This document shows positions 2,500 through 57,024 of a stretch of 64,000 nucleotides of DNA, piece by piece; positions within the stretch are counted from its first letter, which is position 1, and the number at the start of each line of letters is the position of its first letter. Position numbers and translations under genes: made by a program. The notes beneath the pieces were generated by a model that had not been told where the DNA came from, ran no database searches, and saw only the letters and a program-made list of their open reading frames with translations. The stretch is taken from NCBI RefSeq assembly GCF_001194135.2, contig NC_068994.1, positions 4,568,993 through 4,632,992 of the forward strand, written 5' to 3'. Origin of the DNA: Octopus bimaculoides (lineage: Eukaryota).

Positions 2500-3467
2500 C
2501 AGACACAGCAATATTTATATACACATGAATGCATAAACCTACATTTAAGTGCATAAGTGTGTGTGTGTGTGTTGGTGGGGTTGGGTGAGTGTGTGTGTGT
2601 GCGTGTATAAATACATGTTGGCTTGCTGTGTAGGGTGGTGACGATGGTGGAGTGTCTCATGTAACACTGCTACCCATTTTGCTGAGGGCGGTGGAGATAT
2701 TACAAAAAGTGGTGGTTTGTTTCTTTNNNNNNNNNNNNNNNNNNNNNNNNNNNNNNNNNNNNNNNNNNNNNNNNNNNNNNNNNNNNNNNNNNNNNNNNNN
2801 NNNNNNNNNNNNNNNNNNNNNNNNNNNNNNNNNNNNNNNNNNNNNNNNNNNNNNNNNNNNNNNNNNNNNNNNNNNNNNNNNNNNNNNNNNNNNNNNNNNN
2901 NNNNNNNNNNNNNNNNNNNNNNNNNNNNNNNNNNNNNNNNNNNNNNNNNNNNNNNNNNNNNNNNNNNNNNNNNNNNNNNNNNNNNNNNNNNNNNNNNNNN
3001 NNNNNNNNNNNNNNNNNNNNNNNNNNNNNNNNNNNNNNNNNNNNNNNNNNNNNNNNNNNNNNNNNNNNNNNNNNNNNNNNNNNNNNNNNNNNNNNNNNNN
3101 NNNNNNNNNNNNNNNNNNNNNNNNNNNNNNNNNNNNNNNNNNNNNNNNNNNNNNNNNNNNNNNNNNNNNNNNNNNNNNNNNNNNNNNNNNNNNNNNNNNN
3201 NNNNNNNNNNNNNNNNNNNNNNNNNNNNNNNNNNNNNNNNNNNNNNNNNNNNNNNNNNNNNNNNNNNNNNNNNNNNNNNNNNNNNNNNNNNNNNNNNNNN
3301 NNNNNNNNNNNNNNNNNNNNNNNNNNNNNNNNNNNNNNNNNNNNNNNNNNNNNNNNNNNNNNNNNNNNNNNNNNNNNNNNNNNNNNNNNNNNNNNNNNNN
3401 NNNNNNNNNNNNNNNNNNNNNNNNNNNNNNNNNATACATATATATATATATATATATATGAGTATAT

Positions 3468-17100: not shown

Positions 17101-19238
17101 GCAGTCTGGGTTTTGGGCGCACACATACACACGCACGCACACACACACACACAACATACACACACACACACACACACAACATACACACACACACACACAC
17201 ACGCAGAGTCTTTTTCTCTCTTTTACTCCCTCCCTCTCTTCTCTGCTTATTCCTTCTCTTCTTTCCCTCTCCCATTGTTTTTATCTCCCTCAACAGTGAG
17301 ATGAGGGAGAAAGATGGTAGTAGTGGGAGTGATTCGAAAAAGTAGGTTGTGTGTGTATGAATATATATGTGTGCGTGTGCGCGCGCTGGCGTGTGTGATA
17401 AAGTAGCGTAAAGTTAGATGGTGGCGGTGGTGTTGAAGAGGAAGTTGGGGGGAGTGTGTAAGCTCCACCGCCGCCACCATCATCATTACTATCGCCTTAT
17501 CACTGGTACTACCGCCTCCACCCCTGCTGCCGATGTATTCCGCCACCGCCGCCATTCCGCTATGACCACTATAAAACACCACCACCACCGCCAATGCCAT
17601 CGAGGCCTCTTCCACTCCTACCATTGTTTTCTTTATTCTTCGCACATCATCATCATCATCACCGGCATTATTACCATCGTCATCTGATGTCTTTTTATAT
17701 TTCCTATGAATATTATTAAAACTACTTACCATAACCACTATCATCATCATCATCATCATCGTCGTCGTCGTAGTCGATGTCGTTGTCATACCTTTTTGAA
17801 GTAGACACATGCATGTGTATATTTGTGTGCATGTATGTGTAACATATACTGCACATACATCACATATGTTATATACATACATGTATACGCGTGCACACAC
17901 ACACACACACATTATATATATATACATATAAGTAATATATATACATGTGTATATACACCTAGTTGGATCAGAGGAATGGAGAAAAGGAAGAGTTTCACCT
18001 GACCCAGAAACTAACCACACCTTAATTACAAACACCACCACCACCACTACTACTATTGTAAAGAAAAAAAGAAAGGAAATAGAAACATTCCTTGCTGAAC
18101 CCCTGCATGCTTGGGTGACAGAGGTCAACTGTATGGCTGACCTTTTATATATATATATATATATACATACACACACCTAAGATGTGTTGACCACATCCTG
18201 GACATCTCTGCTGATTTCTCCCCACCCCACCTGCACCTCAACTGACCTCACCACCCCTCCACATACTGACATCTTACCTGAGAGAGAGAGAGGCTCAGAG
18301 TGGTCACTCAAATTGCTAGATATAGTAGCCACATCTCTCGCAAGCAATACCTTACACAAAGTGGGGAAAATGCAATTCAGAGTACACTGTTTCTGAAAAT
18401 CAGACTGATGGTCATGGTTGGAATGCCTTTGAATATTGGTTTGTTTAATCAGAGGCTTACCGGCAGCTGAACAACAACTATGCAAGCATTTTAATTATAG
18501 AGATCACATAGATATGGTCTATGTTATAAGATACACATTATTTTCTTTTATTTCTTCTGAAAAATTTATTATTTTCTTAAAATTATCTATTTTCTGCTGT
18601 CAGTTTTATTAATCTCTTTTTTAATTTTCATTTTGTCTTTCATATTTTTCAGAATTTCTTCTTTGTTTGACACGAGAAAGCACCTTTGAAAGCTGTTTTG
18701 TGGCAGTAATCCCGAAGAAGTAAAAAAACCACAATTGTCTGCTGCTATCTGAACCAACAATCTTCTCTGATTCGATGATATTTAACTCTCAAATGTTTTC
18801 CACCATCAAACAAGAAGAGACGACATACAAACACATCTTAGAAACATATTTGGTTGACCAATCTCTCCTTACTTCATTTCTAACTCCAATTAAACTTTCT
18901 TAGCTGGCCCAGAATCAATGCACACACATATATATATATATGTGTATATATATATATAACATATTTTATAATATTCTCCAGCATTGATATCTAATAACGG
19001 CTGCAGTTTTTAAGACTTTACAAGATATTCTCTGACCACCTCTGACAACATTTCACTGTCTGCTCAGAGTTAACAGATGTAGAGTGAAATATTTATATAT
19101 ATATATATATATTGATATAGATATTTGTATAGATTGAAATATTGCTTTGTTACTCAGATATATAAATATCTGTATATAAAATTCTTTTTTGAAACTTCAT
19201 GTTTGCCGATTGAAAAATTAAAAAAAAACCTTGCAAAA

Positions 19239-22070
19239 ATGTCTCGAAGCAGCAATTTGAAAAGACGAAAGAAATCTCGGGCCGCAAATGTTGAACGGAA
19301 AAAAAGTGTGGATAATAATAATGGCCCGAATGAAGAAAATGGAGAAGCAGGAGATAACAACATGAAACAAGAAGCTACAGATGAACAACAACAACAACAG
19401 GAGCATCAACAAGAACAACAGATGAAAGAAGAAAATGAGAAATTGGTTGAGCAGATGTCTTCTTCGTGCCAAGAAGAAGCATGTGAAATGAACTCAGATT
19501 TCGTTGGCGATAATAACGAAAAGAAACTCATTAATGATTATGCTGAAAATAGTAGTAATGACGATATTAATAATAATACTAATTATAATAATTTCAATGA
19601 TGATAATAATAATGTTGTTAGCGAAGACAGCGAGGGTATGGAGGTAGGTGACGAAGAAGAAGACGCTGCCCGACTTGAAGAGAAGAGCAAGGAAGAAGAG
19701 GAGCAAAGACTGAAACGGATCAAAGAAGAAGAGGAATACTGCAAGCGACTGGAACAGGAAGGAGAGGAAGGCACGGCTGTCATTCGTGTTCAGACAATGG
19801 AAAATTCTCATCGGTGCCAGATTTGCAACGAGGAATTTGCTGGTTTCCTTGATCTTGAGAAACATAAACTAACCCATCGGCAAATGAAGTCATTCGACTG
19901 CAAAATCTGCAGCAAGACTTTCACTCGCCGCAACCATCTGAAACAACACAAGAGAACACACAAGAGGCCCAATAAACTGCTGAAACCATTGTTCCAGTGT
20001 AACGTTTGTGGGCTGAGATTCTCTCAGAAAATAAACTTGATTGATCACGAAAAGAATCATGAAACTGAGATTTCTCCGCAGGAAGAGTATACTCCGCCGC
20101 CCCCGCCCCAACCACAGCCCCTACAACAGCCCCTACCACAGCCCCTACCACAGCCCCTACCACAGCCCCTGCCACAGCCTCTGGCCCAACCCTTACCTCA
20201 GCCCCAACCAGTGGTCTGTGATTCAGACCGACCTTACAAATGCAATTACTGTGAACGTACTTTCTCTAGGAATGGTGACTTAATGCGACATATGAGGTTC
20301 CATGAAGAGGACACGAGGCAACAACAGCCACAATACTTGAACCCTCATCTACTGTGTCAAGATGAGAAACCATTTAAGTGTAACATCTGTGAACGTGTGT
20401 TTTCAAGGAACGGTGATCTGACGCGCCATTTTCGAGTTCACGAAGAGCCGTCATATCAGCCATCTCAAGTTGCCAACTGCCAGAATGGAGAGGTATTCAA
20501 ATGCAATATCTGCCAGTCTACATTTTCAACCAACGGTAACCTCACCAGACATATGAAGATCCACGAAGAAGTGGTCATCCAGAACAGCCCCAACCATTGC
20601 TATCAAAAAGAAGGCATGTTTTTCTGCAATGTGTGTGGCATTGAATTTACCCGCAATGGGGATCTCACCAGACATTTCAAAACCCATGAGGAACCGTTGC
20701 TCCAAAACTGCAGCCAAATCAATAACAATTGTAATAATAATGACCCCTTTAAATGTAACATCTGCGGACTTGCATTTTCCCAAAACAATGACCTTACTAG
20801 GCATATGAAGAGCCATACTGAATCCTGCATGCCCCACAATGTATACGGCTGTAACGGTGGTTGTACAGAAGAACCCCCTATGGCATTCTCTTGCCGCCTC
20901 TGCCGACGTGTGTTCTCCACGTTTATAGATATGACAGAACATATGAAGATGCATATGGAAGCATCTCACGCTCCACTCACAATGAAGCCGTGTTTTGATA
21001 GTCAAAGCCATGGCAGCCCTAAGGGTTGTATGGATGAACAACATTGCAGTATTCCACGACCTTGTCTCAAAGACGAACCTCAGAATGGCTTGAGATCGTA
21101 TCTCGAAGACCAACCCATCATTTGTCCAATATGCAAACGATTGTTCTCACGACCAGGAGATCTAACAAGACATATGAGGACGCATGGTGAAACCGTTCTG
21201 CAGGAACACGAAAATTTAGCTTTTTATCAAGAGGAGAAACCATTTAAATGCAACATTTGTACACGCACTTTCTCAAGAAACGGTGATTTGACCAGGCATT
21301 TTCGTAGTCATGAAGACACCTATCTTCAAAATGTCGGCAACCCAGTTGTTCCATACGAAACTGAAGAATCCCATCGCTGCAACACTTGTTGTTCAGTTTT
21401 CTCTACAAACGGCAATCTGACGAGACACATGAAAATCCATGAGGAATTTATTAGCCAGCAAAATCTGAACAATTCTCCATTACAAAGAAATAACAATTCA
21501 TTCCGATGTACAATATGTCAGAACTATTTCTCGACAAACGGTAATTTAACTCGGCACATGAAAACACATCGTGAATATTTTAGTCAGAACACTCCACCAA
21601 TGTCTGTGTGTCCAAATGAAGACAGTTCCATGTGTCAGAACATTTGTCCACTGGATGCAGACTTCCAAGACGGAGAAAATTTAAATTTTGATTGTGAAGA
21701 ATGCATGAAGGCTTACAATGAGAAAAACAACCAGAACCATAGCCCCTCTCTGCAGACTTTCACGTGTGTTATTTGCGAGAAAGTGTTTACAAACTGTGAG
21801 ATGTTTGAGAGGCATGTTCGAAGCCATAACCAAGATAAACCTTTCATCTGTGAAATATGTGGAAAAGGGTTTGTACAGAAATACCACCTGACTGTTCATA
21901 AAAGGACTCACACCGGAGAAAGACCCTTTAAATGTAATTTATGCGGGTTCGCTTTCTCTCGCAAGGACCATTTGGTAAGGCACCAAAGGGACAATAAGGT
22001 TGGAATGTACATCTCAGAGGCAGGTGAGACACGATATTCCTGCATCCCAGGTGGTGCTTTACCAAGATAG
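19239..22070 (+). CDS. C2H2 zinc-finger protein ZNF-A, 943 aa, single long coding exon
   Basis: Uninterrupted ORF with ATG in an A-rich context (GCAAAAATGT). It has a basic N-terminal patch (KRRKKSR), an acidic/Asn/Gln-rich region, 15 complete CxxC-x12-HxxxH fingers, one degenerate finger and one finger lacking the last His; a single TGERP linker lies near the C-terminus. No KRAB/BTB/SCAN-like domain was recognised. Confidence 0.93.
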   Translation: MSRSSNLKRRKKSRAANVERKKSVDNNNGPNEENGEAGDNNMKQEATDEQQQQQEHQQEQQMKEENEKLVEQMSSSCQEEACEMNSDFVGDNNEKKLINDYAENSSNDDINNNTNYNNFNDDNNNVVSEDSEGMEVGDEEEDAARLEEKSKEEEEQRLKRIKEEEEYCKRLEQEGEEGTAVIRVQTMENSHRCQICNEEFAGFLDLEKHKLTHRQMKSFDCKICSKTFTRRNHLKQHKRTHKRPNKLLKPLFQCNVCGLRFSQKINLIDHEKNHETEISPQEEYTPPPPPQPQPLQQPLPQPLPQPLPQPLPQPLAQPLPQPQPVVCDSDRPYKCNYCERTFSRNGDLMRHMRFHEEDTRQQQPQYLNPHLLCQDEKPFKCNICERVFSRNGDLTRHFRVHEEPSYQPSQVANCQNGEVFKCNICQSTFSTNGNLTRHMKIHEEVVIQNSPNHCYQKEGMFFCNVCGIEFTRNGDLTRHFKTHEEPLLQNCSQINNNCNNNDPFKCNICGLAFSQNNDLTRHMKSHTESCMPHNVYGCNGGCTEEPPMAFSCRLCRRVFSTFIDMTEHMKMHMEASHAPLTMKPCFDSQSHGSPKGCMDEQHCSIPRPCLKDEPQNGLRSYLEDQPIICPICKRLFSRPGDLTRHMRTHGETVLQEHENLAFYQEEKPFKCNICTRTFSRNGDLTRHFRSHEDTYLQNVGNPVVPYETEESHRCNTCCSVFSTNGNLTRHMKIHEEFISQQNLNNSPLQRNNNSFRCTICQNYFSTNGNLTRHMKTHREYFSQNTPPMSVCPNEDSSMCQNICPLDADFQDGENLNFDCEECMKAYNEKNNQNHSPSLQTFTCVICEKVFTNCEMFERHVRSHNQDKPFICEICGKGFVQKYHLTVHKRTHTGERPFKCNLCGFAFSRKDHLVRHQRDNKVGMYISEAGETRYSCIPGGALPR
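20112..20210 (+). repeat. In-frame 12-bp tandem repeat encoding (PQPL)n
   Basis: CAGCCCCTACCA units, 7-8 copies, inside ZNF-A. Confidence 0.9.
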
Positions 22071-22409: not shown

Positions 22410-22441
22410 AATAAAAGAATATATTATATTGATAAAATAAA
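22410..22441 (+). terminator. Candidate polyadenylation signals for ZNF-A
   Basis: AATAAA at 22410-22415 and 22436-22441, about 350 bp after the stop; the AT-rich context makes chance matches likely. Confidence 0.3.
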
Positions 22442-22512
22442 TGTAAATATAGATATGCATATATATATATATGTATATATATAAATGTATATATGTGTGT
22501 GTATGTATGTAT

Positions 22513-22549
<37 letters not shown>

Positions 22550-23349
22550 CTCACACACAGTGGGTAGATAGCTATTACTCAAGTTTTGTCACAATCCAGT
22601 ATGGCATGTTAAAGAAACTGAAACAATGATGATGATGAAAATAATAATTAATGATAATAATAATAATAATATGGAAACAATGGCTTACACACACACACAT
22701 GTATGAGAAGAACATTTTGTTACTAACTCAATTGTCATGGAGAGACGTGTGAAAAGAACGAGGGGAGAATTATAAACTTAGAAATAATTCTTGCTCAATC
22801 AAAAACCTGATAAATAAATTGATTGAATTTTTATATTTTCTTCTTTTTGTTAACAAAGAAGGCAACAAGAAGAAGAAGAAGAGACATTTTATTTATTTCT
22901 TGTTTTTTTTTTTATTATTTCTATGAAGATTTTTTTTATGTACACAGCCTTTTGTTGGTTTTTTTTTAACTTGTGTATTATTACCTCCCTTTATATGAAC
23001 TCTTTGTTTTCCTCCCTTGAAACTTCAATGTCTCTCTCTCTCTCCCACACTCTCTCTCTCTATGTCCTTCTCTCTCTATTCACACAGACAAACACATTTA
23101 CATTCACATCTATCCACAATCTCTGCTCTCTTTCTTTCTGTCTTATTGTTTAGTTGGACAGTAGCTATCAGAATCATAAGACTGCTAACTATTGATTCTT
23201 TGTTTCCACTTTTCCACATCTACCTTGTCTAGTTTTCTTGAAGAAAGAAAGAAAGAAAGAAAATAACAAAGAAAAAAACTGAAAAAGGAAAAGAGAGAAA
23301 ACACACAGGAATATTAAATAACACTGCATATTTGAATGTGTGTGTTTAT

Positions 23350-36120: not shown

Positions 36121-37372
36121 AACAGAAAGTCAATAAGCTATATATGTATATACATACATAAATACATATATTTGTGTGTGTGTGTGTGTGACTGACCATA
36201 AAGGAAGCAAGAGGAATATAAAGTAGTTCACGTGACAACAGACTAAACTACGAGGATGGGGATGTGAGAATAGAATGGTTCTTCTCTCTTCTCAAGAGTT
36301 TCATAGTCTTTAAAAAGAAAAAGAAAAAAAAACAACAACAGTGTCCAATTGGTGAAACACTGGAAGAAAAGGTTAGAAAAAAAAAAAAACATTTCATTTC
36401 GTCTGTTAATGGTGCAATCCTTTAAGTTTTGTGAATGGTCAGGAAATAAAAAAGACACAAAAATAGATGGGGGGGAAAATGGTAAAAAAAAAAGGGTAAN
36501 NNNNNNNNNNNNNNNNNNNNNNNNNNNNNNNNNNNNNNNNNNNNNNNNNNNNNNNNNNNNNNNNNNNNNNNNNNNNNNNNNNNNNNNNNNNNNNNNNNNN
36601 NNNNNNNNNNNNNNNNNNNNNNNNNNNNNNNNNNNNNNNNNNNNNNNNNNNNNNNNNNNNNNNNNNNNNNNNNNNNNNNNNNNNNNNNNNNNNNNNNNNN
36701 NNNNNNNNNNNNNNNNNNNNNNNNNNNNNNNNNNNNNNNNNNNNNNNNNNNNNNNNNNNNNNNNNNNNNNNNNNNNNNNNNNNNNNNNNNNNNNNNNNNN
36801 NNNNNNNNNNNNNNNNNNNNNNNNNNNNNNNNNNNNNNNNNNNNNNNNNNNNNNNNNNNNNNNNNNNNNNNNNNNNNNNNNNNNNNNNNNNNNNNNNNNN
36901 NNNNNNNNNNNNNNNNNNNNNNNNNNNNNNNNNNNNNNNNNNNNNNNNNNNNNNNNNNNNNNNNNNNNNNNNNNNNNNNNNNNNNNNNNNNNNNNNNNNN
37001 NNNNNNNNNNNNNNNNNNNNNNNNNNNNNNNNNNNNNNNNNNNNNNNNNNNNNNNNNNNNNNNNNNNNNNNNNNNNNNNNNNNNNNNNNNNNNNNNNNNN
37101 NNNNNNNNNNNNNNNNNNNNNNNNNNNNNNNNNNNNNNNNNNNNNNNNNNNNNNNNNNGGGGGGGGGGGGCACATGTTTTCATTGGTTGCTCGTTGCTTG
37201 AAATCCAAACATCTTCACAGCACTGAGGATGTTGTGGCTATGCTCCAGTCTTTACAAATGGATCAAGTGATTGTCTTGGCAGTGGAATTATAACAAAACA
37301 GAGACTCTCTGATATAGTAATATGATAACAACACTAATAATAAAAATAAAAATAATAATTATTATTATTATT

Positions 37373-43873: not shown

Positions 43874-46385
43874 TCATTTTGATGTGCTGGGGTGGCTGGT
43901 CTGGCCCTTTGTTGGGGCGGTTCCTCTTGGATACTCAATCCTACTGCATGGGAAAACACTGGGCATGTTTGCCCAGGTGGTAGGGGGCATCGAGGTCATA
44001 GAAAAGCCGCGGGGCCAGAGGTAGTTACCCTCCCAGCGCTGGGACATCTCGTGGAGGTTCATGGAGGTCATCCACGAGGAAGAGGTGTGAGGGGATGCTG
44101 ATGATGACGGAACAGACGAGGGAGATGACGCGGGCATTAACGACTGTCCTGACCGTCCACCGACTGATGGGGAGGGGATCAACAACGAGGTGTTGGACTG
44201 CTGCTGCTGTTGTTGTTGTTGTTGTGGCTGTTGTTGTTGTTGTTGTTGTGTCATGTGAGCATTCGTCTGGCGGTTGTTCTGGTTCTGGTTATGCGCCATA
44301 CTCTGAGTGTAGTCAGTAGCAGACTTCAGATTAGAACTCTCGCTCTTCACATTACCTGCATTGACTGCAGAGTTGTTTGTTGTGCTAACTGCAGTCGGAA
44401 CCCTAGGGTTATTGGCTCCACTCGGGGCTGTCTTCACACCGGTGCTGCCACCTGCGACACTGCTTCCGTTGTCCTGCAACAACATGGCGTCCCTCTCGGC
44501 AGACTGCTTAGCTGCGAGCATGAGGCTTGCGTTGTGTGCCTTAGCAGCATGCGAGCGCTTGTGGTTGATCAACGTGGTCCGTTGTGCGAAGGATTTCGAA
44601 CACAAGTCACAGGTGAATGGCTTGATGCCAGTGTGAACACGTTCGTGCGCATGCAAGTTACTAAGCTGACTGAACATTTTATTGCAGGTGTTGCATCGAT
44701 ATGGCTTCTCACCCGAGTGGACACGCTCGTGTGTCCGTAAATTAACCAGCTGAGTAAATGCCTTTGAACACATTGAACACTTAAAAAGGTCTCCTGAATG
44801 CAAGCGACGGTGGTTTTCAAGATTCGCACGCTGGCTAAAGGTCTTTGAACACTGTTCGCAGCTGTATGGTTTTTCCCCGGTGTGAATACGTTCGTGCATT
44901 TTTTGGTTGCTCTGCTGACTAAAGGCTTTCGGACAATAACTACATTTGAAAGGTTTCTCACCTGTGTGAGTCCTTATGTGAGATTTTTGCTCGGTTTGCT
45001 GACAAAATGCTTTAGGGCAATACGTGCATTTGTAAGGCTTGATCCCTGTGTGAATACGTTCGTGGTTCTGCAAGTTGATTTCCAACGTAAAGGCTTTTCC
45101 ACAAACTAAGCACTTGAACAAGTCCCCCGTGTGTATCCGCTTGTGACTGTCAAGGTTAGTTTTTTGAGAAAACGACCGATCACACTGATCGCAGTGGAAC
45201 CGTTTTTCACCAGTATGAGAACACAAGTGGGCCTTTAACGTACCCTGTTGACTAAATGATTTGGAGCAGTAGGTGCAGTGGTAGGGCTTCACCCCCGTGT
45301 GCAATCGCTCGTGGTTGTTTAGTGCACTTTGTTGCGAAAATCTCGAGCTGCAAAACGTGCAGGCAAAGGGCCGCTCCCCCGTGTGCACTCGTTCATGATT
45401 GCGTAAGTTTATCTCGAGGGTAAATGCTTTGGGGCAGGTCGAACACTTGAAGAGGTCGCCGGTGTGAATGCGTTTATGACTGTCGAGGTTTGTCTTTTGA
45501 GAGAAGGAACGGTCACAGAGGTCGCAATGGAAGCGTTTCTCACCCGTGTGCGAACAAAGGTGAGCTTTGAGAGTCCCCTGTTGGCTGAAGGATTTTGAGC
45601 AGAACGTACACTGGTATGGCTTCACTCCTGTGTGGAGGCGTTCATGATTGCGAAGTGCGCTCTGCTGAGAGAAGCGACGGTTGCAATAGGTGCAAACAAA
45701 TGGCCTCTCTCCAGTATGGATCCTCTGGTGGTTATGAAGATTTATCTCCAGAGTGAAAGCTTTGGAACAGATCTGACAAGTAAACAAGTCTCCTGTATGC
45801 ACCCTCTTGTGACTGTCCAGGTTAGTCTTCTGGCTGAAACATTTCTCACACTTGTCGCATTTGTACGGTTTCTCTCCTGAATGTGTACGAAGGTGGATCT
45901 TTAAGTTTCCCTGTTGGCTGAATGACTTTGAACAAATGGCACAGTGAAAGGGCTTCTCACCCGAATGCACACGCTGGTGGCTTTTCAGGTTTACCAATAG
46001 ACTGAAAGCCTTACCGCATGTGTTACAGGTGAAAGGTTTCACACCTGTGTGTGTTCTTTCGTGGTTGCGGAGAAAAATTTGCTGAGAGAAAGCTTTGTTA
46101 CAAAACGAACAAAAGAACGTTTTCTCTTTGGCTAGACTTTTCTGTAGTGCTGGATCGGTGACGCTTTGGAGGTTCGGCTGCCCCACCATCGGCACGGTGA
46201 GCATCGCCTGAGGGGGTGGGATTGCAGGAACTGTTAGGGGCAGGGACAGTAGACCCGAGCCACTCATTGAACACTCGTGGTTCATCATGTCCATCTTTTG
46301 GCTGAAGGTCTTCTTGCAGGCTTCACATTTGAACTGCTTTCTTTCAGAAGCATCGTTCGAGTCACACTGCGAGTCATGAGTCTTT
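43874..46385 (-). CDS. C2H2 zinc-finger protein ZNF-B (5' end hidden in the gap 46386-47333)
   Basis: Open frame from the gap edge to TGA at 43874. It contains one atypical finger (CxxC..HECS), 19 tandem C2H2 fingers at 46117-44549 with TGEKP-type or (T/S)GDL linkers, and a Gln/Ser/Asn-rich C-terminal tail. Confidence 0.92.
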
Positions 46386-47333
46386 NNNNNNNNNNNNNNN
46401 NNNNNNNNNNNNNNNNNNNNNNNNNNNNNNNNNNNNNNNNNNNNNNNNNNNNNNNNNNNNNNNNNNNNNNNNNNNNNNNNNNNNNNNNNNNNNNNNNNNN
46501 NNNNNNNNNNNNNNNNNNNNNNNNNNNNNNNNNNNNNNNNNNNNNNNNNNNNNNNNNNNNNNNNNNNNNNNNNNNNNNNNNNNNNNNNNNNNNNNNNNNN
46601 NNNNNNNNNNNNNNNNNNNNNNNNNNNNNNNNNNNNNNNNNNNNNNNNNNNNNNNNNNNNNNNNNNNNNNNNNNNNNNNNNNNNNNNNNNNNNNNNNNNN
46701 NNNNNNNNNNNNNNNNNNNNNNNNNNNNNNNNNNNNNNNNNNNNNNNNNNNNNNNNNNNNNNNNNNNNNNNNNNNNNNNNNNNNNNNNNNNNNNNNNNNN
46801 NNNNNNNNNNNNNNNNNNNNNNNNNNNNNNNNNNNNNNNNNNNNNNNNNNNNNNNNNNNNNNNNNNNNNNNNNNNNNNNNNNNNNNNNNNNNNNNNNNNN
46901 NNNNNNNNNNNNNNNNNNNNNNNNNNNNNNNNNNNNNNNNNNNNNNNNNNNNNNNNNNNNNNNNNNNNNNNNNNNNNNNNNNNNNNNNNNNNNNNNNNNN
47001 NNNNNNNNNNNNNNNNNNNNNNNNNNNNNNNNNNNNNNNNNNNNNNNNNNNNNNNNNNNNNNNNNNNNNNNNNNNNNNNNNNNNNNNNNNNNNNNNNNNN
47101 NNNNNNNNNNNNNNNNNNNNNNNNNNNNNNNNNNNNNNNNNNNNNNNNNNNNNNNNNNNNNNNNNNNNNNNNNNNNNNNNNNNNNNNNNNNNNNNNNNNN
47201 NNNNNNNNNNNNNNNNNNNNNNNNNNNNNNNNNNNNNNNNNNNNNNNNNNNNNNNNNNNNNNNNNNNNNNNNNNNNNNNNNNNNNNNNNNNNNNNNNNNN
47301 NNNNNNNNNNNNNNNNNNNNNNNNNNNNNNNNN

Positions 47334-56150: not shown

Positions 56151-56409
56151 TGGTCTATTGGTTAAGCATTTAAGCAATTAATTGATTGATTGATTAAGCA
56201 TTCAATTAATCAATCAGTCAGCTGTTTGCCAAAGTCCTTTTGTTGCCATTCACCACCTCATTAATGAGTAGCCCTCTTACATTCTAAAGGTAAACCTGAT
56301 GCTCCCACTACAGACCCGTAATGCCTTTTTTTTTTTAAGTGGTATCAAGGAGAACTGCAGTTAAGGAGGTGATGGGTGGTGATGAGTGTCTTGATGAAGA
56401 AGGAAATTG

Positions 56410-56457
<48 letters not shown>

Positions 56458-56489
56458 CACACACGTATATATACACTGACATCAACTAT

Positions 56490-56757
56490 TCTGCTTATAT
56501 GTCTGTACACACCTTTGAATGCAGTGTATGCCAGAAGATTTGCAAATCCAACAGAGGCCTCAAAAGACATTTTAAGATCCACAAAGAGCAGAACTTATCT
56601 GCAGCTTTTGGTGGTCCAAATCAAATATGCAGTCTATGTGGGTGTCTTTCCAGAACATTGTCTGGTTTAAAAAGCCACATCAGACGCCATGAAAGGGCTA
56701 AGGTGTGGGTACAGGAGATGGTCAAACTCTGTATAAGGAGTAGACGACCACCATACA
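56490..56757 (+). mobile_element. Two C2H2-like fingers, probably the C-terminal end of an RTE-clade LINE ORF2
   Basis: FECSVCQKICKSNRGLKRHFKIH and CSLCGCLSRTLSGLKSHIRRH; the GLxSHxRxH pattern resembles RTE ORF2 C-termini; no real upstream start. Confidence 0.5.
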
Positions 56758-57024
56758 CAGACACAACTCTACCAAGACTCAGTTTCACCAAGGCACGTGA
56801 GTTTTCTCAAAAATGCAAAATAACCAGTTGACCTGGTTCTTTGTCATCACCTCCATAAGACTTGGCATCCTGAGATCAGCCTTCACCACTACATCCCATG
56901 TCTCCCTGGGGTGTCAACTCTTCTGTAAGCTCCACCCACATTTAGTAACCAGCACTTCTTTAAACATCTGTCCTCATCCAAACACATCACAGTCTTCTTT
57001 CTTGCCCACTACATCCGATTCCTC

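What the first reader, a model, noticed from the sequence alone, without database searches (positions are those of the whole stretch)
20235..21569. ZNF-A: beads-on-a-string fingers with cloned helices and long acidic-start linkers
Seen: ten consecutive fingers are separated not by the 5-aa TGEKP linker but by 18-23 aa linkers (one of about 54 aa). These linkers mostly begin EE, ED, GE or TE and often contain Cys. Helices are reused: RNGDL(T/M)R four times, RPGDLTR, QNNDLTR and TNGNLTR three times, while the linkers have diverged freely; fingers 4-7 parallel 10-13. Known: canonical linkers are needed for contiguous 3-bp-step DNA wrapping, and isolated fingers bind DNA weakly and often bind RNA or protein. 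Inference: selection keeps one or two specificities multivalent on a flexible chain, suited to spaced or repetitive sites, DNA bridging, CpG-methylation-sensitive GCG reading or RNA binding.
Basis: partly seen in the sequence, partly recalled or inferred. Interest (0 to 1): 0.7.

Follow-up and report, generated by a model that had tools for sequence, protein, structure and literature searches.

The report
Octopus zinc-finger gene: ten tethered single fingers
An Octopus bimaculoides gene encodes ten separate DNA-reading zinc fingers joined by floppy acidic spacers; the fingers are old copies that selection has kept nearly identical, an unusual but not unprecedented design whose targets are unknown.

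Summary
Window 19239-22070 (+) is one intact 943-codon reading frame in Octopus bimaculoides. It has 16 C2H2 fingers. Fingers 4-13 (20241-21569) are separated by 20-25 residues, and once by 56, against 7 in a canonical linker. Their helices are RNGDLTR x3, RNGDLMR, RPGDLTR, QNNDLTR, TNGNLTR x3 and one divergent TFIDMTE.

"Cloned" is wrong as history. Identical helices use different codons, and synonymous sites between fingers are saturated: 214 of 550 identical-residue codon pairs share a codon, against 224 expected from independent draws. The copies are therefore ancient and held by purifying selection, not recent duplication or gene conversion.

The linkers did not diverge freely. They keep an H-EE-x-φ-φ-Q-N start, a (K)PFK end and a narrow length range.

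AlphaFold2 gives confident fingers and low-confidence linkers.

The gene is a divergent member of a small family found here only in coleoid cephalopods. That family carries an NGNLTRH finger followed by an isolated RNGDLTRH finger. Here that pair has been amplified to ten.

No orthologue, transcript or characterised relative was found.

The most likely mechanism, inferred rather than shown, is multivalent reading of clustered GCG and GAT triplets. Closest analogues are plant EPF/ZPT proteins and BCL11B. I rate it a new variant of a known kind, of moderate interest.

The parts
19239..22070 (+). Whole coding sequence: a single exon of 943 codons plus a TAG stop. The collection calls it as a gene in Octopus bimaculoides GCA_001194135.2, CM046614.1.
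   Evidence: ORF list. Exact-product look-up. Relatives are also single-exon.
19239..19808 (+). N-terminal region without fingers. It holds a basic KRRKKSR stretch that looks like a nuclear localisation signal, then acidic, Q- and N-rich sequence with two long predicted helices (residues 43-79 and 139-177).
   Evidence: Translation. AlphaFold2 secondary structure with pLDDT above 90 for both helices. No Pfam effector domain.
19815..20060 (+). Fingers 1-3, the family's N-terminal cluster. The gaps are 7 and 12 residues but the TGEKP sequence is lost, and the helix of finger 3 has diverged (QKINLID against family NGNLTRH).
20105..20210 (+). Tandem repeat with a 12-nt period (8.8 copies) encoding (PLPQ)n, inside the 60-residue spacer between fingers 3 and 4. 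This is a young repeat, unlike the finger array.
   Evidence: Tandem Repeats Finder.
20241..20378 (+). Module 4: finger CNYCERTFSRNGDLMRHMRFH (20241-20303) plus the 25-residue linker EEDTRQQQPQYLNPHLLCQDEKPFK.
   Evidence: AlphaFold2 extends the helix 6 residues past the last His.
20379..20501 (+). Module 5: finger CNICERVFSRNGDLTRHFRVH (20379-20441) plus the 20-residue linker EEPSYQPSQVANCQNGEVFK.
   Evidence: Closest DNA copy is module 11, 78% over 90 nt.
20502..20624 (+). Module 6: finger CNICQSTFSTNGNLTRHMKIH (20502-20564) plus the 20-residue linker EEVVIQNSPNHCYQKEGMFF.
20625..20753 (+). Module 7: finger CNVCGIEFTRNGDLTRHFKTH (20625-20687) plus the 22-residue linker EEPLLQNCSQINNNCNNNDPFK.
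20754..20891 (+). Module 8: finger CNICGLAFSQNNDLTRHMKSH (20754-20816) plus the 25-residue linker TESCMPHNVYGCNGGCTEEPPMAFS, which holds 3 Cys.
20892..21122 (+). Module 9: divergent finger CRLCRRVFSTFIDMTEHMKMH (20892-20954) plus the 56-residue Cys/His-rich linker. The linker is predicted disordered (pLDDT 25-30).
21123..21248 (+). Module 10: finger CPICKRLFSRPGDLTRHMRTH (21123-21185) plus the 21-residue linker GETVLQEHENLAFYQEEKPFK. Its P-I-I-C start matches the third isolated finger of the B-type relatives (PYIC).
21249..21377 (+). Module 11: finger CNICTRTFSRNGDLTRHFRSH (21249-21311) plus the 22-residue linker EDTYLQNVGNPVVPYETEESHR.
21378..21506 (+). Module 12: finger CNTCCSVFSTNGNLTRHMKIH (21378-21440) plus the 22-residue linker EEFISQQNLNNSPLQRNNNSFR.
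   Evidence: The helix runs 8 residues past the last His.
21507..21569 (+). Finger 13: CTICQNYFSTNGNLTRHMKTH, the last finger of the array.
21687..21752 (+). Degenerate relic of the family's 'W finger' (FDCEECMKAYNEKNNQNHSPSL). The CxxC is kept and the His pair is lost. It lies inside the 65-residue spacer after finger 13. The O. vulgaris relative P0121 has lost the same His pair.
   Evidence: Alignment A1. Family table.
21765..21983 (+). Fingers 14-16, the family's C-terminal cluster, with near-canonical linkers (NQDKPF, TGERPF). Finger 16 (21933-21983) has C2H only, and the next possible ligand is Cys at 22041-22043 (SCIP).

Best explanation
This is a real, selectively maintained, single-exon gene for a nuclear C2H2 protein. 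It belongs to a small family found here only in coleoid cephalopods.

The family's ancestral plan has four parts:
- three tandem N-terminal fingers, the last with helix NGNLTRH;
- after a long spacer, one to three isolated fingers with helix RNGDLTRH followed by H-EE;
- a Trp-containing finger;
- a C-terminal tandem cluster.

In this gene the isolated-finger module was duplicated internally long ago to give ten modules of about 43 residues. Each module is a classical finger whose recognition helix runs on into a short conserved acidic extension (EE-x-φ-φ-Q-N). A variable, disordered stretch of about 10 residues follows, ending in (K)PFK.

Shown:
- the anatomy;
- the antiquity of the copies;
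- purifying selection on the helices;
- conservation of the same helices across cephalopods;
- predicted independence of the fingers.

Inferred:
- Each module reads its own 3-bp subsite: GCG for R-x-G-D-L-T-R, GAT-like for T-N-G-N-L-T-R, GCA for Q-N-N-D-L-T-R.
- One finger alone binds weakly. Useful affinity would therefore come from avidity, with many modules on one flexible chain engaging clusters of these short motifs at variable spacing, orientation and strand.
- The better-linked terminal finger clusters could act as anchors.
- The acidic linkers (net -21 against +21 for the fingers) would damp non-specific binding.
For: Gene reality:
- The frame is 943 codons with no stop, in DNA of 35% G+C.
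- It is called as a gene in GCA_001194135.2.

Anatomy.

Antiquity and selection:
- Between fingers mean pS is 0.95 and mean pN is 0.30.
- Identical RNGDLTR and TNGNLTR helices are spelled with four Arg codons, six Leu codons and four Thr codons.
- 214 of 550 identical-residue codon pairs share a codon, against 224 expected from independent draws.
- Tandem Repeats Finder does not detect the array.
- Specificity positions have about half the entropy of surface positions and of the neighbouring canonical ZNF-B.

Family:
- P0127, P0131, P0121, P0124, P0132, P0061, P0079, P0084 and P0106 share the helices, the HEE start and both terminal clusters.

Linkers:
- The head and tail are conserved, the cores are mostly unalignable (mean z 0.6), and 8 of 9 lengths fall within 20-25 residues.

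Structure:
- Fingers have pLDDT 80-94, linkers below 50, and pTM is 0.28. Helices extend 5-8 residues past the last His in fingers 4, 6, 12 and 13.

Subsites:
- RSGDLTR = GCG and QSGDLTR = GCA (PMC5260015).
- TSGNLVR = GAT and RSDDLVR = GCG (PMC9705829).

Precedents for the mode of action:
- Plant EPF/ZPT fingers on long linkers each bind their own core site, with a preferred spacing (PMC3268024).
- The homotypic BCL11B finger arrays on a long acidic linker bind clustered short motifs in variable orientation and spacing (PMC13225276).
Against: - There are no binding data of any kind.
- No orthologue turned up in three word-index searches or one exhaustive HMMER search. Orthologue dN/dS could therefore not be computed, and the age of the array rests on within-gene comparison alone.
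- No transcript-derived copy of this protein was seen. The exact sequence is absent from the protein collection, so expression is unverified.
- Position +2 is Gly, not the Asp that buttresses Arg(-1) in Zif268-type GCG fingers. The triplet assignment is therefore approximate.
- Parts of the gene look relaxed: finger 3 and finger 9 helices have diverged, the W finger has lost its His ligands, and the family's C-terminal VPHY[MI]NI tail is absent.
- Acidic residues directly after the last His could disfavour DNA contact.
Confidence: 0.5

Rival explanations
1. The isolated fingers are not DNA readers. They are protein-protein or RNA-binding modules, as in Ikaros-type dimerisation fingers, FOG-type fingers or JAZ/dsRBP-ZFa dsRNA fingers. 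The repeated helix would then be a conserved docking surface for a repeated or oligomeric partner.
For: - Isolated fingers on long linkers are typical of the JAZ/dsRBP-ZFa and FOG classes (established knowledge).
- Acidic residues flank every finger, and the array as a whole is net neutral.
- Pfam gives a summed zf-C2H2_jaz score of E 1e-12.
Against: - All ten fingers have H-x3-H spacing, not the H-x5-H of the JAZ type.
- No single stretch passes the JAZ or zf-met models inside the array.
- The residues held constant are exactly the canonical base-contact positions: Arg/Thr/Gln at -1, Asp/Asn at 3 and Arg at 6. They match helices with known DNA triplets.
- The closest solved structures are all DNA-bound classical fingers: ZNF568, Aart, Zif268/Egr1 and CTCF.
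Confidence: 0.2
2. The array works as an ordinary polydactyl reader of one long contiguous site. The 20-25-residue linkers simply loop out, or let fingers skip bases, and have no role in spacing tolerance.
For: - Linker length is tightly held at 20-25 residues in 8 of 9 cases, although the core sequences have diverged. This suggests a geometric constraint.
- Engineered finger arrays tolerate longer linkers (PMC3589541, seen but not read in detail).
Against: - A contiguous site read by ten fingers with only three helix types would itself be a near-repeat, (GCG/GAT)n. That collapses into the main explanation.
- The loss of TGEKP removes the helix-capping lock that stabilises adjacent-finger binding (established knowledge).
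- AlphaFold2 gives no fixed arrangement between fingers (pTM 0.28).
Confidence: 0.12
3. The gene is a decaying or functionless lineage-specific duplicate, or an annotation artefact. The repeated helices would then only reflect shared descent.
For: - No orthologue or transcript-derived copy was found.
- The C-terminal family motif is lost.
- One finger is degenerate and two helices have diverged.
Against: - A 943-codon open frame in 65% A+T DNA cannot persist without selection.
- pN is about 0.3 while pS is saturated, and several helices are identical at the amino-acid level after complete synonymous turnover.
Confidence: 0.05
4. The helices are identical because the fingers were copied recently, by tandem duplication or gene conversion. 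This is the literal sense of the reader's word 'cloned'.
For: The helices are repeated 3-4 times, and the finger order partly recurs (5-6 against 11-12).
Against: - Nucleotide identity between fingers is only 46-72%.
- Synonymous sites are at the level expected for independent codon draws.
- TRF finds no tandem array.
- Gene conversion would have homogenised the silent sites as well.
Confidence: 0.02

Closest known systems
Coleoid cephalopod family carrying the NGNLTRH and RNGDLTRH fingers. It is unnamed. Members are annotated only as 'zinc finger 473', 'OZF-like', 'KRAB' or 'ZNF70-like': P0121 from O. vulgaris, P0131 from O. sinensis, P0124/P0132/P0127 from Acanthosepion and Logan contigs, P0061/P0079/P0084, and P0106 from Argonauta.
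   Same: - Single coding exon.
- N-terminal three-finger cluster.
- Isolated RNGDLTRH finger followed by H-EE-x-φ-φ-Q-N.
- C-terminal cluster ending QKYHLTVHKRTHTGERPFKC..CGFAFSRKDHLxRHQRxNK...SC[IV]P.
- 64-67% identity in the C-terminal block.
   Different: - Relatives have one to three isolated fingers, whereas this gene has ten.
- Its N-terminal fingers have lost TGEKP.
- The W finger has lost its His pair.
- The VPHY[MI]NI tail is absent.
- A 190-residue acidic N-terminal extension has been added.
- It is about equally distant from the A and B types, so it is a third old lineage and not the orthologue of any retrieved protein.
Plant EPF/ZPT (Q-type) TFIIIA-type zinc-finger proteins
   Same: Classical C2H2 fingers are separated by long, sequence-diverse linkers. 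All fingers share one helix type. Each finger binds its own short core site, and linker length tunes the preferred spacing (PMC3268024).
   Different: - The plant signature helix QALGGH is absent here.
- Plant proteins have 1-4 fingers, not 10.
- The core site is AGT rather than the predicted GCG/GAT.
- There is no sequence relationship beyond the C2H2 fold, so this is an analogue and not a member.
BCL11A/BCL11B bipartite finger arrays
   Same: Homotypic finger modules with near-identical base-contact residues sit on a long, acidic, disordered linker. They bind clustered short motifs with variable orientation and spacing (PMC13225276).
   Different: BCL11 has two multi-finger modules on one linker of about 300 residues. 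This gene has ten single-finger modules on linkers of about 22 residues. There is no orthology.
Other beads-on-a-string C2H2 arrays in animals, all uncharacterised: lungfish XP_043923561 (P0257), mantis shrimp XP_076061278 and XP_076043436 (P0258, P0282), sturgeon KAK1155109 (P0313), the wasp Eretmocerus KAJ8682271 (P0239), and P0247 and P0240.
   Same: They have runs of 8-19 consecutive fingers separated by 15-45 residues, with a few helix types recurring.
   Different: - The helices are unrelated.
- In several of them (P0247, P0239, P0257) the linkers are themselves near-identical repeats, which points to young tandem duplication. Here the linker cores have diverged completely.
- None has a known function.
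Krüppel-type polydactyl ZNFs, for example the neighbouring ZNF-B at 44549-46111 (- strand) and vertebrate KZFPs
   Same: The finger consensus and single-exon finger array are the same. ZNF-B also has old internal block duplications with saturated silent sites.
   Different: - These proteins have canonical 7-residue linkers.
- Their variability is concentrated at helix positions -1, 2, 3 and 6: 1.73 bit in ZNF-B against 0.91 bit here.
- This gene shows the opposite pattern, with constant helices and variable spacers.

Membership tests
Classical TFIIIA/Krüppel-type C2H2 zinc finger (Pfam PF00096) | C-x2-4-C-x12-H-x3-5-H ligand spacing with a conserved Phe and Leu core | tested here: met
   All ten array fingers are C-x2-C-x3-F-x5-L-x2-H-x3-H; finger 9 has Met in place of the core Leu. 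PF00096 scores E 9e-80 with 13 stretches.
Krüppel-type polydactyl array | Adjacent fingers joined by a conserved linker of the TGEKP type, 7 residues from His to Cys | tested here: not met
   None of the 9 linkers within fingers 4-13 is canonical; the gaps are 20-56 residues. Only fingers 14-15-16 have NQDKPF and TGERPF.
KRAB / SCAN / BTB / ZAD zinc-finger proteins | An N-terminal effector domain of that type | tested here: not met
   The Pfam scan of the whole protein returns only finger models and weak spurious hits. The 'KRAB' label on the Acanthosepion relatives has no KRAB hit behind it.
JAZ / dsRBP-ZFa / ZNF346-type dsRNA-binding fingers (PF12171) | H-x5-H ligand spacing and a match to the JAZ/zf-met model for the individual fingers | tested here: not met
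   All fingers have H-x3-H spacing. PF12171 and PF12874 have no stretch, or one, that passes alone, and their best stretch is at residues 219-242, outside the array.
JAZ / dsRBP-ZFa / ZNF346-type dsRNA-binding fingers (PF12171) | Fingers separated by long linkers of tens of residues | tested here: met
   The gaps are 20-56 residues. This feature alone does not define the family.
Plant EPF/ZPT Q-type C2H2 proteins | An invariant QALGGH motif in the recognition helix | tested here: not met
   The helices are RNGDLTR, TNGNLTR and QNNDLTR.
Plant EPF/ZPT Q-type C2H2 proteins | Long linkers of diverse sequence between fingers that share one helix type | tested here: met
   The comparison is with PMC3268024.
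Plant EPF/ZPT Q-type C2H2 proteins | Each finger binds a separate core site at a preferred spacing | not testable with these tools
   This needs SELEX or gel-shift experiments.
Coleoid NGNLTRH/RNGDLTRH family (defined in this report) | An isolated finger with helix RNGDLTRH followed by H-E-E, flanked by spacers of at least 20 residues | tested here: met
   The window protein has seven such fingers (4, 5, 7, 10 and 11, with variants). Each of P0127, P0131, P0124, P0121, P0061, P0079 and P0084 has one to three.
Coleoid NGNLTRH/RNGDLTRH family (defined in this report) | A C-terminal cluster ...QKYHLTVHKRTHTGERPFKC..CGFAFSRKDHLxRHQRxNK...SC[IV]P | tested here: met
   Alignments A1 and A2. Identity to P0127 and P0132 in this block is 64-67%.
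Coleoid NGNLTRH/RNGDLTRH family (defined in this report) | An intact Trp/Leu finger (C..C[WL]KAF...H...H) before the C-terminal cluster | tested here: not met
   The CxxC is kept (FDCEECMKAY) but the His pair is lost. The same is true of O. vulgaris P0121.
Coleoid NGNLTRH/RNGDLTRH family (defined in this report) | A C-terminal VPHY[MI]NI motif (A and B types) | tested here: not met
   No match was found in any of the six frames of the 64-kb window. The frame stops 9 codons after the SCIP Cys.
RREB1 / Hindsight | An orthologous arrangement of about 14 widely spaced fingers | tested here: not met
   Only finger 3 of RREB1 (FTTNGNMHRHMKIH) resembles the TNGNLTRHMKIH fingers. The other fingers and their order differ.

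The most novel reading that the evidence does not exclude
This gene would be the first animal example of an ancient array of ten homotypic single-finger modules kept by selection. It would work by avidity, as a 'counting' or clustering reader. It would recognise the local density of very short motifs (GCG or CpG-containing, and GAT) rather than one long word. Possible targets are satellite or tandem repeats, or CpG-rich islands, in the repeat-rich octopus genome. The alternating blocks of charge (basic fingers, acidic linkers) would tune specificity or drive condensate-like assembly. That would make it a mode of C2H2 recognition distinct from both the Krüppel-type contiguous code and the two-finger plant EPF system.
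Probability: 0.25. Interest if true: 0.65.

Novelty: new variant of a known kind. Interest (0 to 1): 0.42.

Why it matters
C2H2 proteins make up about 4% of O. bimaculoides genes (PMC12513265), and almost none has a known target. In most expanded ZNF families the scaffold stays constant and the DNA-contact residues vary. This gene shows the reverse: the contact residues have stayed constant through complete turnover of silent sites, while the spacers changed.

That is a clean natural case of selection for valency rather than for a longer recognition word. Together with similar uncharacterised arrays in lungfish, sturgeon, mantis shrimp and a wasp, it suggests a recurrent, unstudied architectural class of animal zinc-finger proteins.

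It also offers a simple biochemical system. There are ten near-identical modules with predicted triplets, which can be used to test how linker length and charge set spacing tolerance and avidity.

Tried and rejected
- **Orthologue search.** I ran three word-index searches: whole protein, array only and a family profile. I also ran one exhaustive HMMER search of 1.84 billion representatives. None gave a protein with more than about 250 bits over the array. Top hits were generic polydactyl ZNFs scoring through many separate fingers.
- **Exact look-ups.** The exact protein is not in the protein collection. The look-up for the O. vulgaris relative P0121 failed.
- **C-terminal tail.** I looked for the family's C-terminal VPHY[MI]NI tail on a downstream exon or in another frame. 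There is none in the window. A GT after 'HL' at 21975 looked like a splice donor, but relatives read straight through the same sequence (RKDHLVRHQRDNK), so I rejected splicing.
- **Tandem-repeat detection.** Tandem Repeats Finder reports only low-complexity repeats and the (PLPQ)n repeat, not the finger array.
- **Extra zinc sites in the Cys-rich linkers.** AlphaFold2 gives them pLDDT 25-45 and no structure, so there is no support.
- **Solved structures.** PDB sequence search gave only generic classical fingers, and no protein with this spacing.
- **Family outside cephalopods.** The profile search found no member outside cephalopods. A one-finger resemblance to RREB1 finger 3 was noted and not pursued.
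- **Clustering of paralogues.** Family genes in O. sinensis, O. vulgaris, Acanthosepion and Argonauta stand alone within ±10 kb.
- **Literature.** A search for the helix strings returned nothing.
- I did not run fold search, because a multi-domain model with pTM 0.28 would only match single fingers.

Full report
**Where and what**

The window is from Octopus bimaculoides (GCA_001194135.2, chromosome CM046614.1, about 4.58 Mb). It has 35% G+C and 14 assembly gaps.

The finding lies in a single uninterrupted reading frame, ATG 19239 to TAG 22068-22070 on the + strand, 943 codons. The collection calls exactly this product as a gene. Related genes in O. sinensis, O. vulgaris and Argonauta are likewise single-exon.

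Pfam finds only classical C2H2 models (PF00096, E 9e-80, 13 stretches) and no KRAB, SCAN, BTB or ZAD domain.

**Checking the observation**

A pattern parse gives 15 complete fingers and a 16th with C2H only.

- Fingers 1-3 (19815-20060) are close together.
- A 60-residue spacer follows. It contains a young 12-nt tandem repeat encoding (PLPQ)n (20105-20210).
- Fingers 4-13 then occupy 20241-21569.
- Their His-to-Cys gaps are 25, 20, 20, 22, 25, 56, 21, 22 and 22 residues, against 7 for a canonical linker.
- Their helices at -1 to +6 are RNGDLMR, RNGDLTR, TNGNLTR, RNGDLTR, QNNDLTR, TFIDMTE, RPGDLTR, RNGDLTR, TNGNLTR and TNGNLTR.
- Linkers start EE (five times), TE, ME, GE and ED. Twelve Cys lie in five of the first six linkers and none in the last three.

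The claimed parallel between fingers 4-7 and 10-13 holds for 5/11 (87% aa identity, 78% nt identity over 90 nt) and 6/12 (78% aa). It does not hold for 4/10 or 7/13.

**Are the helices 'cloned'?**

No. Nucleotide identity between the ten fingers is only 46-72%. The mean proportion of synonymous differences is 0.95, which is saturated. The mean for non-synonymous differences is 0.30.

The three identical RNGDLTR helices and the three identical TNGNLTR helices are written with four different Arg codons, six Leu codons and four Thr codons.

Over all finger pairs, 214 of 550 codon pairs that encode the same residue use the same codon. Independent draws from the gene's own codon usage would give 224. 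Tandem Repeats Finder does not see the array at all.

The duplications are therefore old. The amino-acid identity of the helices is maintained by purifying selection. It does not come from recent duplication or gene conversion, which would have kept silent sites alike.

Shannon entropy at specificity positions -1, 2, 3 and 6 averages 0.91 bit, against 1.81 bit at the surface positions of the same fingers. In the canonical 19-finger gene ZNF-B in the same window, the specificity positions average 1.73 bit.

**Did the linkers diverge freely?**

Only in their middles. Global alignment of linker cores against shuffled controls gives a mean z of 0.6.

Anchoring on the last His shows a conserved head, H-E-E-x-φ-φ-Q-N: EEVVIQN, EEPLLQN, GETVLQE, EDTYLQN, EEFISQQN and REYFSQN. 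There is also a conserved (K)PFK tail.

The same head follows the isolated finger of relatives in other species: EESLLPQN, EESLYPAN and EESLSQP.

Eight of nine lengths fall within 20-25 residues although the core sequences are unrelated. This suggests that length itself is constrained.

The linkers carry a net charge of -21 and the ten fingers +21.

**Structure prediction**

AlphaFold2 was run on the full protein with a ten-sequence family alignment.

- Every finger has pLDDT 80-94, every linker in the array is below 50, and pTM is 0.28. These are independent beads on a disordered string.
- In fingers 4, 6, 12 and 13 the recognition helix is predicted to continue 5-8 residues past the last His. 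This covers the conserved EE-x-φ-φ-Q-N head.
- The Cys-rich linkers, including the 56-residue one, have pLDDT 25-45, so nothing supports extra zinc sites there.
- Two long helices are predicted with high confidence in the acidic N-terminal region (residues 43-79 and 139-177). They follow a basic KRRKKSR stretch.

**Relatives**

Searching with the whole protein returns only generic polydactyl ZNFs. Searching with the array alone brings up a small set of cephalopod proteins:

| Group | Proteins | Isolated RNGDLTRH-type fingers |
|---|---|---|
| A type | P0127 (Acanthosepion/Logan), P0131 (O. sinensis) | one |
| B type | P0124/P0132 (Acanthosepion), P0121 (O. vulgaris) | three |
| More distant | P0061/P0079/P0084 | one |
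| More distant | P0106 (Argonauta) | none |

All share several features:

- an N-terminal tandem cluster whose last finger has helix NG/SNL(T/A)RH (NVNLTRH or YVNLVRH in the B type);
- long spacers;
- a Trp/Leu finger;
- a C-terminal cluster ending ...QKYHLTVHKRTHTGERPFKC..CGFAFSRKDHLxRHQRxNK...SC[IV]P.

The window protein has all of these landmarks. In the C-terminal block it is about equally distant from A (64%) and B (67%), and A and B are 67% alike. It is therefore a third, old lineage of the family and not the orthologue of any retrieved protein.

Its array alternates the family's two helix types, RNGDLTRHF-like and NGNLTRHM-like. This fits amplification of the ancestral finger pair.

It has also changed elsewhere:

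- TGEKP is lost between fingers 1-3.
- The helix of finger 3 has diverged.
- The Trp/Leu-finger His pair is lost, as in O. vulgaris P0121.
- The VPHY[MI]NI tail is absent from the whole window.
- A 190-residue acidic N-terminal extension has been added.

**No orthologue found**

An exhaustive HMMER search of 1.84 billion representatives and a family-profile search found no orthologue of the ten-finger array and no family member outside coleoid cephalopods. The exact protein is not in the protein collection, so I saw no transcript evidence. I could not search other cephalopod genomes at the DNA level. Absence of orthologues is therefore not shown.

**How unusual is the architecture?**

It occurs at most twice in any of the 427 other proteins retrieved.

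Long runs of spaced fingers do exist elsewhere, though. The exhaustive search surfaced arrays of 8-19 consecutive long-linker fingers with recurring helices in the following:

- a lungfish (XP_043923561);
- a sturgeon (KAK1155109);
- a mantis shrimp (XP_076061278, XP_076043436);
- a parasitoid wasp (KAJ8682271);
- unnamed contigs.

All are uncharacterised. Several have near-identical linkers, which marks them as young tandem duplications, unlike the array here.

**Mechanism**

The residues held constant are the canonical base-contact positions. Published finger modules with nearly the same helices have known triplets:

- RSGDLTR binds GCG and QSGDLTR binds GCA (PMC5260015).
- TSGNLVR binds GAT and RSDDLVR binds GCG (PMC9705829).

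The closest solved structures are all DNA-bound classical fingers. All fingers have H-x3-H spacing, and none passes the dsRNA-type JAZ model on its own.

I therefore favour DNA reading. Each module would take one 3-bp subsite: GCG for six fingers, GAT-like for three and GCA for one. Without a TGEKP lock, affinity would come from many weak contacts made by one flexible chain on clusters of such subsites. Spacing and orientation could vary, and the terminal tandem clusters may act as anchors.

Two characterised systems work this way:

- Plant EPF/ZPT proteins have fingers on long linkers. Each finger binds its own AGT core, with a preferred spacing near 10 bases (PMC3268024).
- BCL11B has two homotypic finger arrays on a long acidic linker. 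They bind clustered short motifs on either strand (PMC13225276).

This step is inference. Position +2 is Gly rather than the Asp that supports Arg(-1) in Zif268, the acidic head after each finger might oppose DNA contact, and there are no binding data.

**Rivals**

- Protein or RNA binding by the isolated fingers remains possible (0.2).
- An ordinary contiguous-site reader with looped linkers is less likely (0.12).
- Decay or artefact is very unlikely, given the open frame and the pN/pS contrast (0.05).
- Recent copying is excluded (0.02).

**Novelty and score**

The fold is ordinary and the gene belongs to the known cephalopod C2H2 expansion (PMC12513265). That paper does not discuss linker architecture; 'linker' does not occur in its text. 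No paper in the library contains these helix strings.

Three things are new:

- a small coleoid family defined by the NGNLTRH/RNGDLTRH finger pair;
- within it, one gene in which the isolated module has been multiplied to ten;
- the finding that the helices, rather than the scaffold or spacers, have been conserved through full turnover of silent sites.

I rate it a new variant of a known kind. Interest is moderate (0.42). It is a tidy, testable natural example of valency selection in zinc fingers, but it has no functional data and it has precedents for the mode of action.

Noticed in passing
window 43874-46385 (- strand; fingers at 44549-46111; the frame runs into the assembly gap 46386-47333): This is a second single-exon zinc-finger gene (ZNF-B). 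It has 19 canonical-linker fingers and a Q-rich C-terminal tail. A four-finger block (helices QQGTLKA / QKTNLDS / LEINLxN / QQSALxN) recurs three times. Every QKTNLDS finger is followed by a shortened HTGDLF linker. Its repeated fingers also have saturated synonymous sites (pS 0.84-1.4, pN 0.03-0.22), so old internal duplication with conserved helices is not unique to ZNF-A.
   Followed up: partly
window 20105-20210: A near-perfect tandem repeat with a 12-nt period (GCCCCTACCACA, 8.8 copies, 81% matches) encodes (PLPQ)n inside the coding sequence, between fingers 3 and 4. It is a young repeat next to a very old one and could vary in length between individuals.
   Followed up: partly
window 19239-19808 (protein residues 1-190): The N-terminal extension is absent from all relatives. 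It has a basic KRRKKSR stretch followed by E/Q/N-rich sequence. AlphaFold2 predicts two long helices there (residues 43-79 and 139-177, pLDDT above 90). These may be single alpha-helices or coiled coils.
   Followed up: no
window 56376-56831 (+), finger-like motifs at 56520-56582 and 56628-56690: A short 151-codon frame is flanked by TA/CA microsatellites. It holds two atypical C2H2-like motifs (CSVCQKICKSNRGLKRHFKIH and CSLCGCLSRTLSGLKSHIRRH) that lack the core Phe. It may be a fragment of a mobile element or a decayed gene.
   Followed up: no
window 21933-22043: The last finger of the family has only C2H in the usual positions. A conserved Cys follows at variable distance: H-x5-C in P0061, H-x11-C in P0131 and H-x19-C here. 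This may be a C2HC finger with an insertion-tolerant loop. In this gene the loop is longest, and the frame ends 9 codons later.
   Followed up: partly
P0424, P0426, P0414 (RREB1/Hindsight homologues of fish, abalone and psyllid), finger 3: Finger 3 of RREB1 (C..C....FTTNGNMHRHM[KR]IH) closely resembles the TNGNLTRHMKIH fingers 6 and 12 of the window protein. The rest of the RREB1 architecture does not match. I did not examine whether this is distant common origin or convergence.
   Followed up: no
P0257, P0239, P0247, P0258, P0282, P0313, P0240, P0366 (retrieved proteins): These are uncharacterised proteins from lungfish, a parasitoid wasp, mantis shrimp, sturgeon and unnamed contigs. They carry 8-19 consecutive fingers separated by 15-45 residues, with two or three alternating helix types. 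In the wasp protein the 'linker' itself holds a second, shorter CxxC...H...H motif. Together they look like a recurrent, unstudied architectural class.
   Followed up: partly
window, 14 runs of N (for example 2727-3433, 36500-37158, 46386-47333); many (TA)n/(CA)n tracts, for example 18920-18960 and 22440-22560: The window contains 6006 N in assembly gaps, and dense dinucleotide microsatellites flank both ZNF genes. One gap truncates the 5' part of ZNF-B.
   Followed up: no
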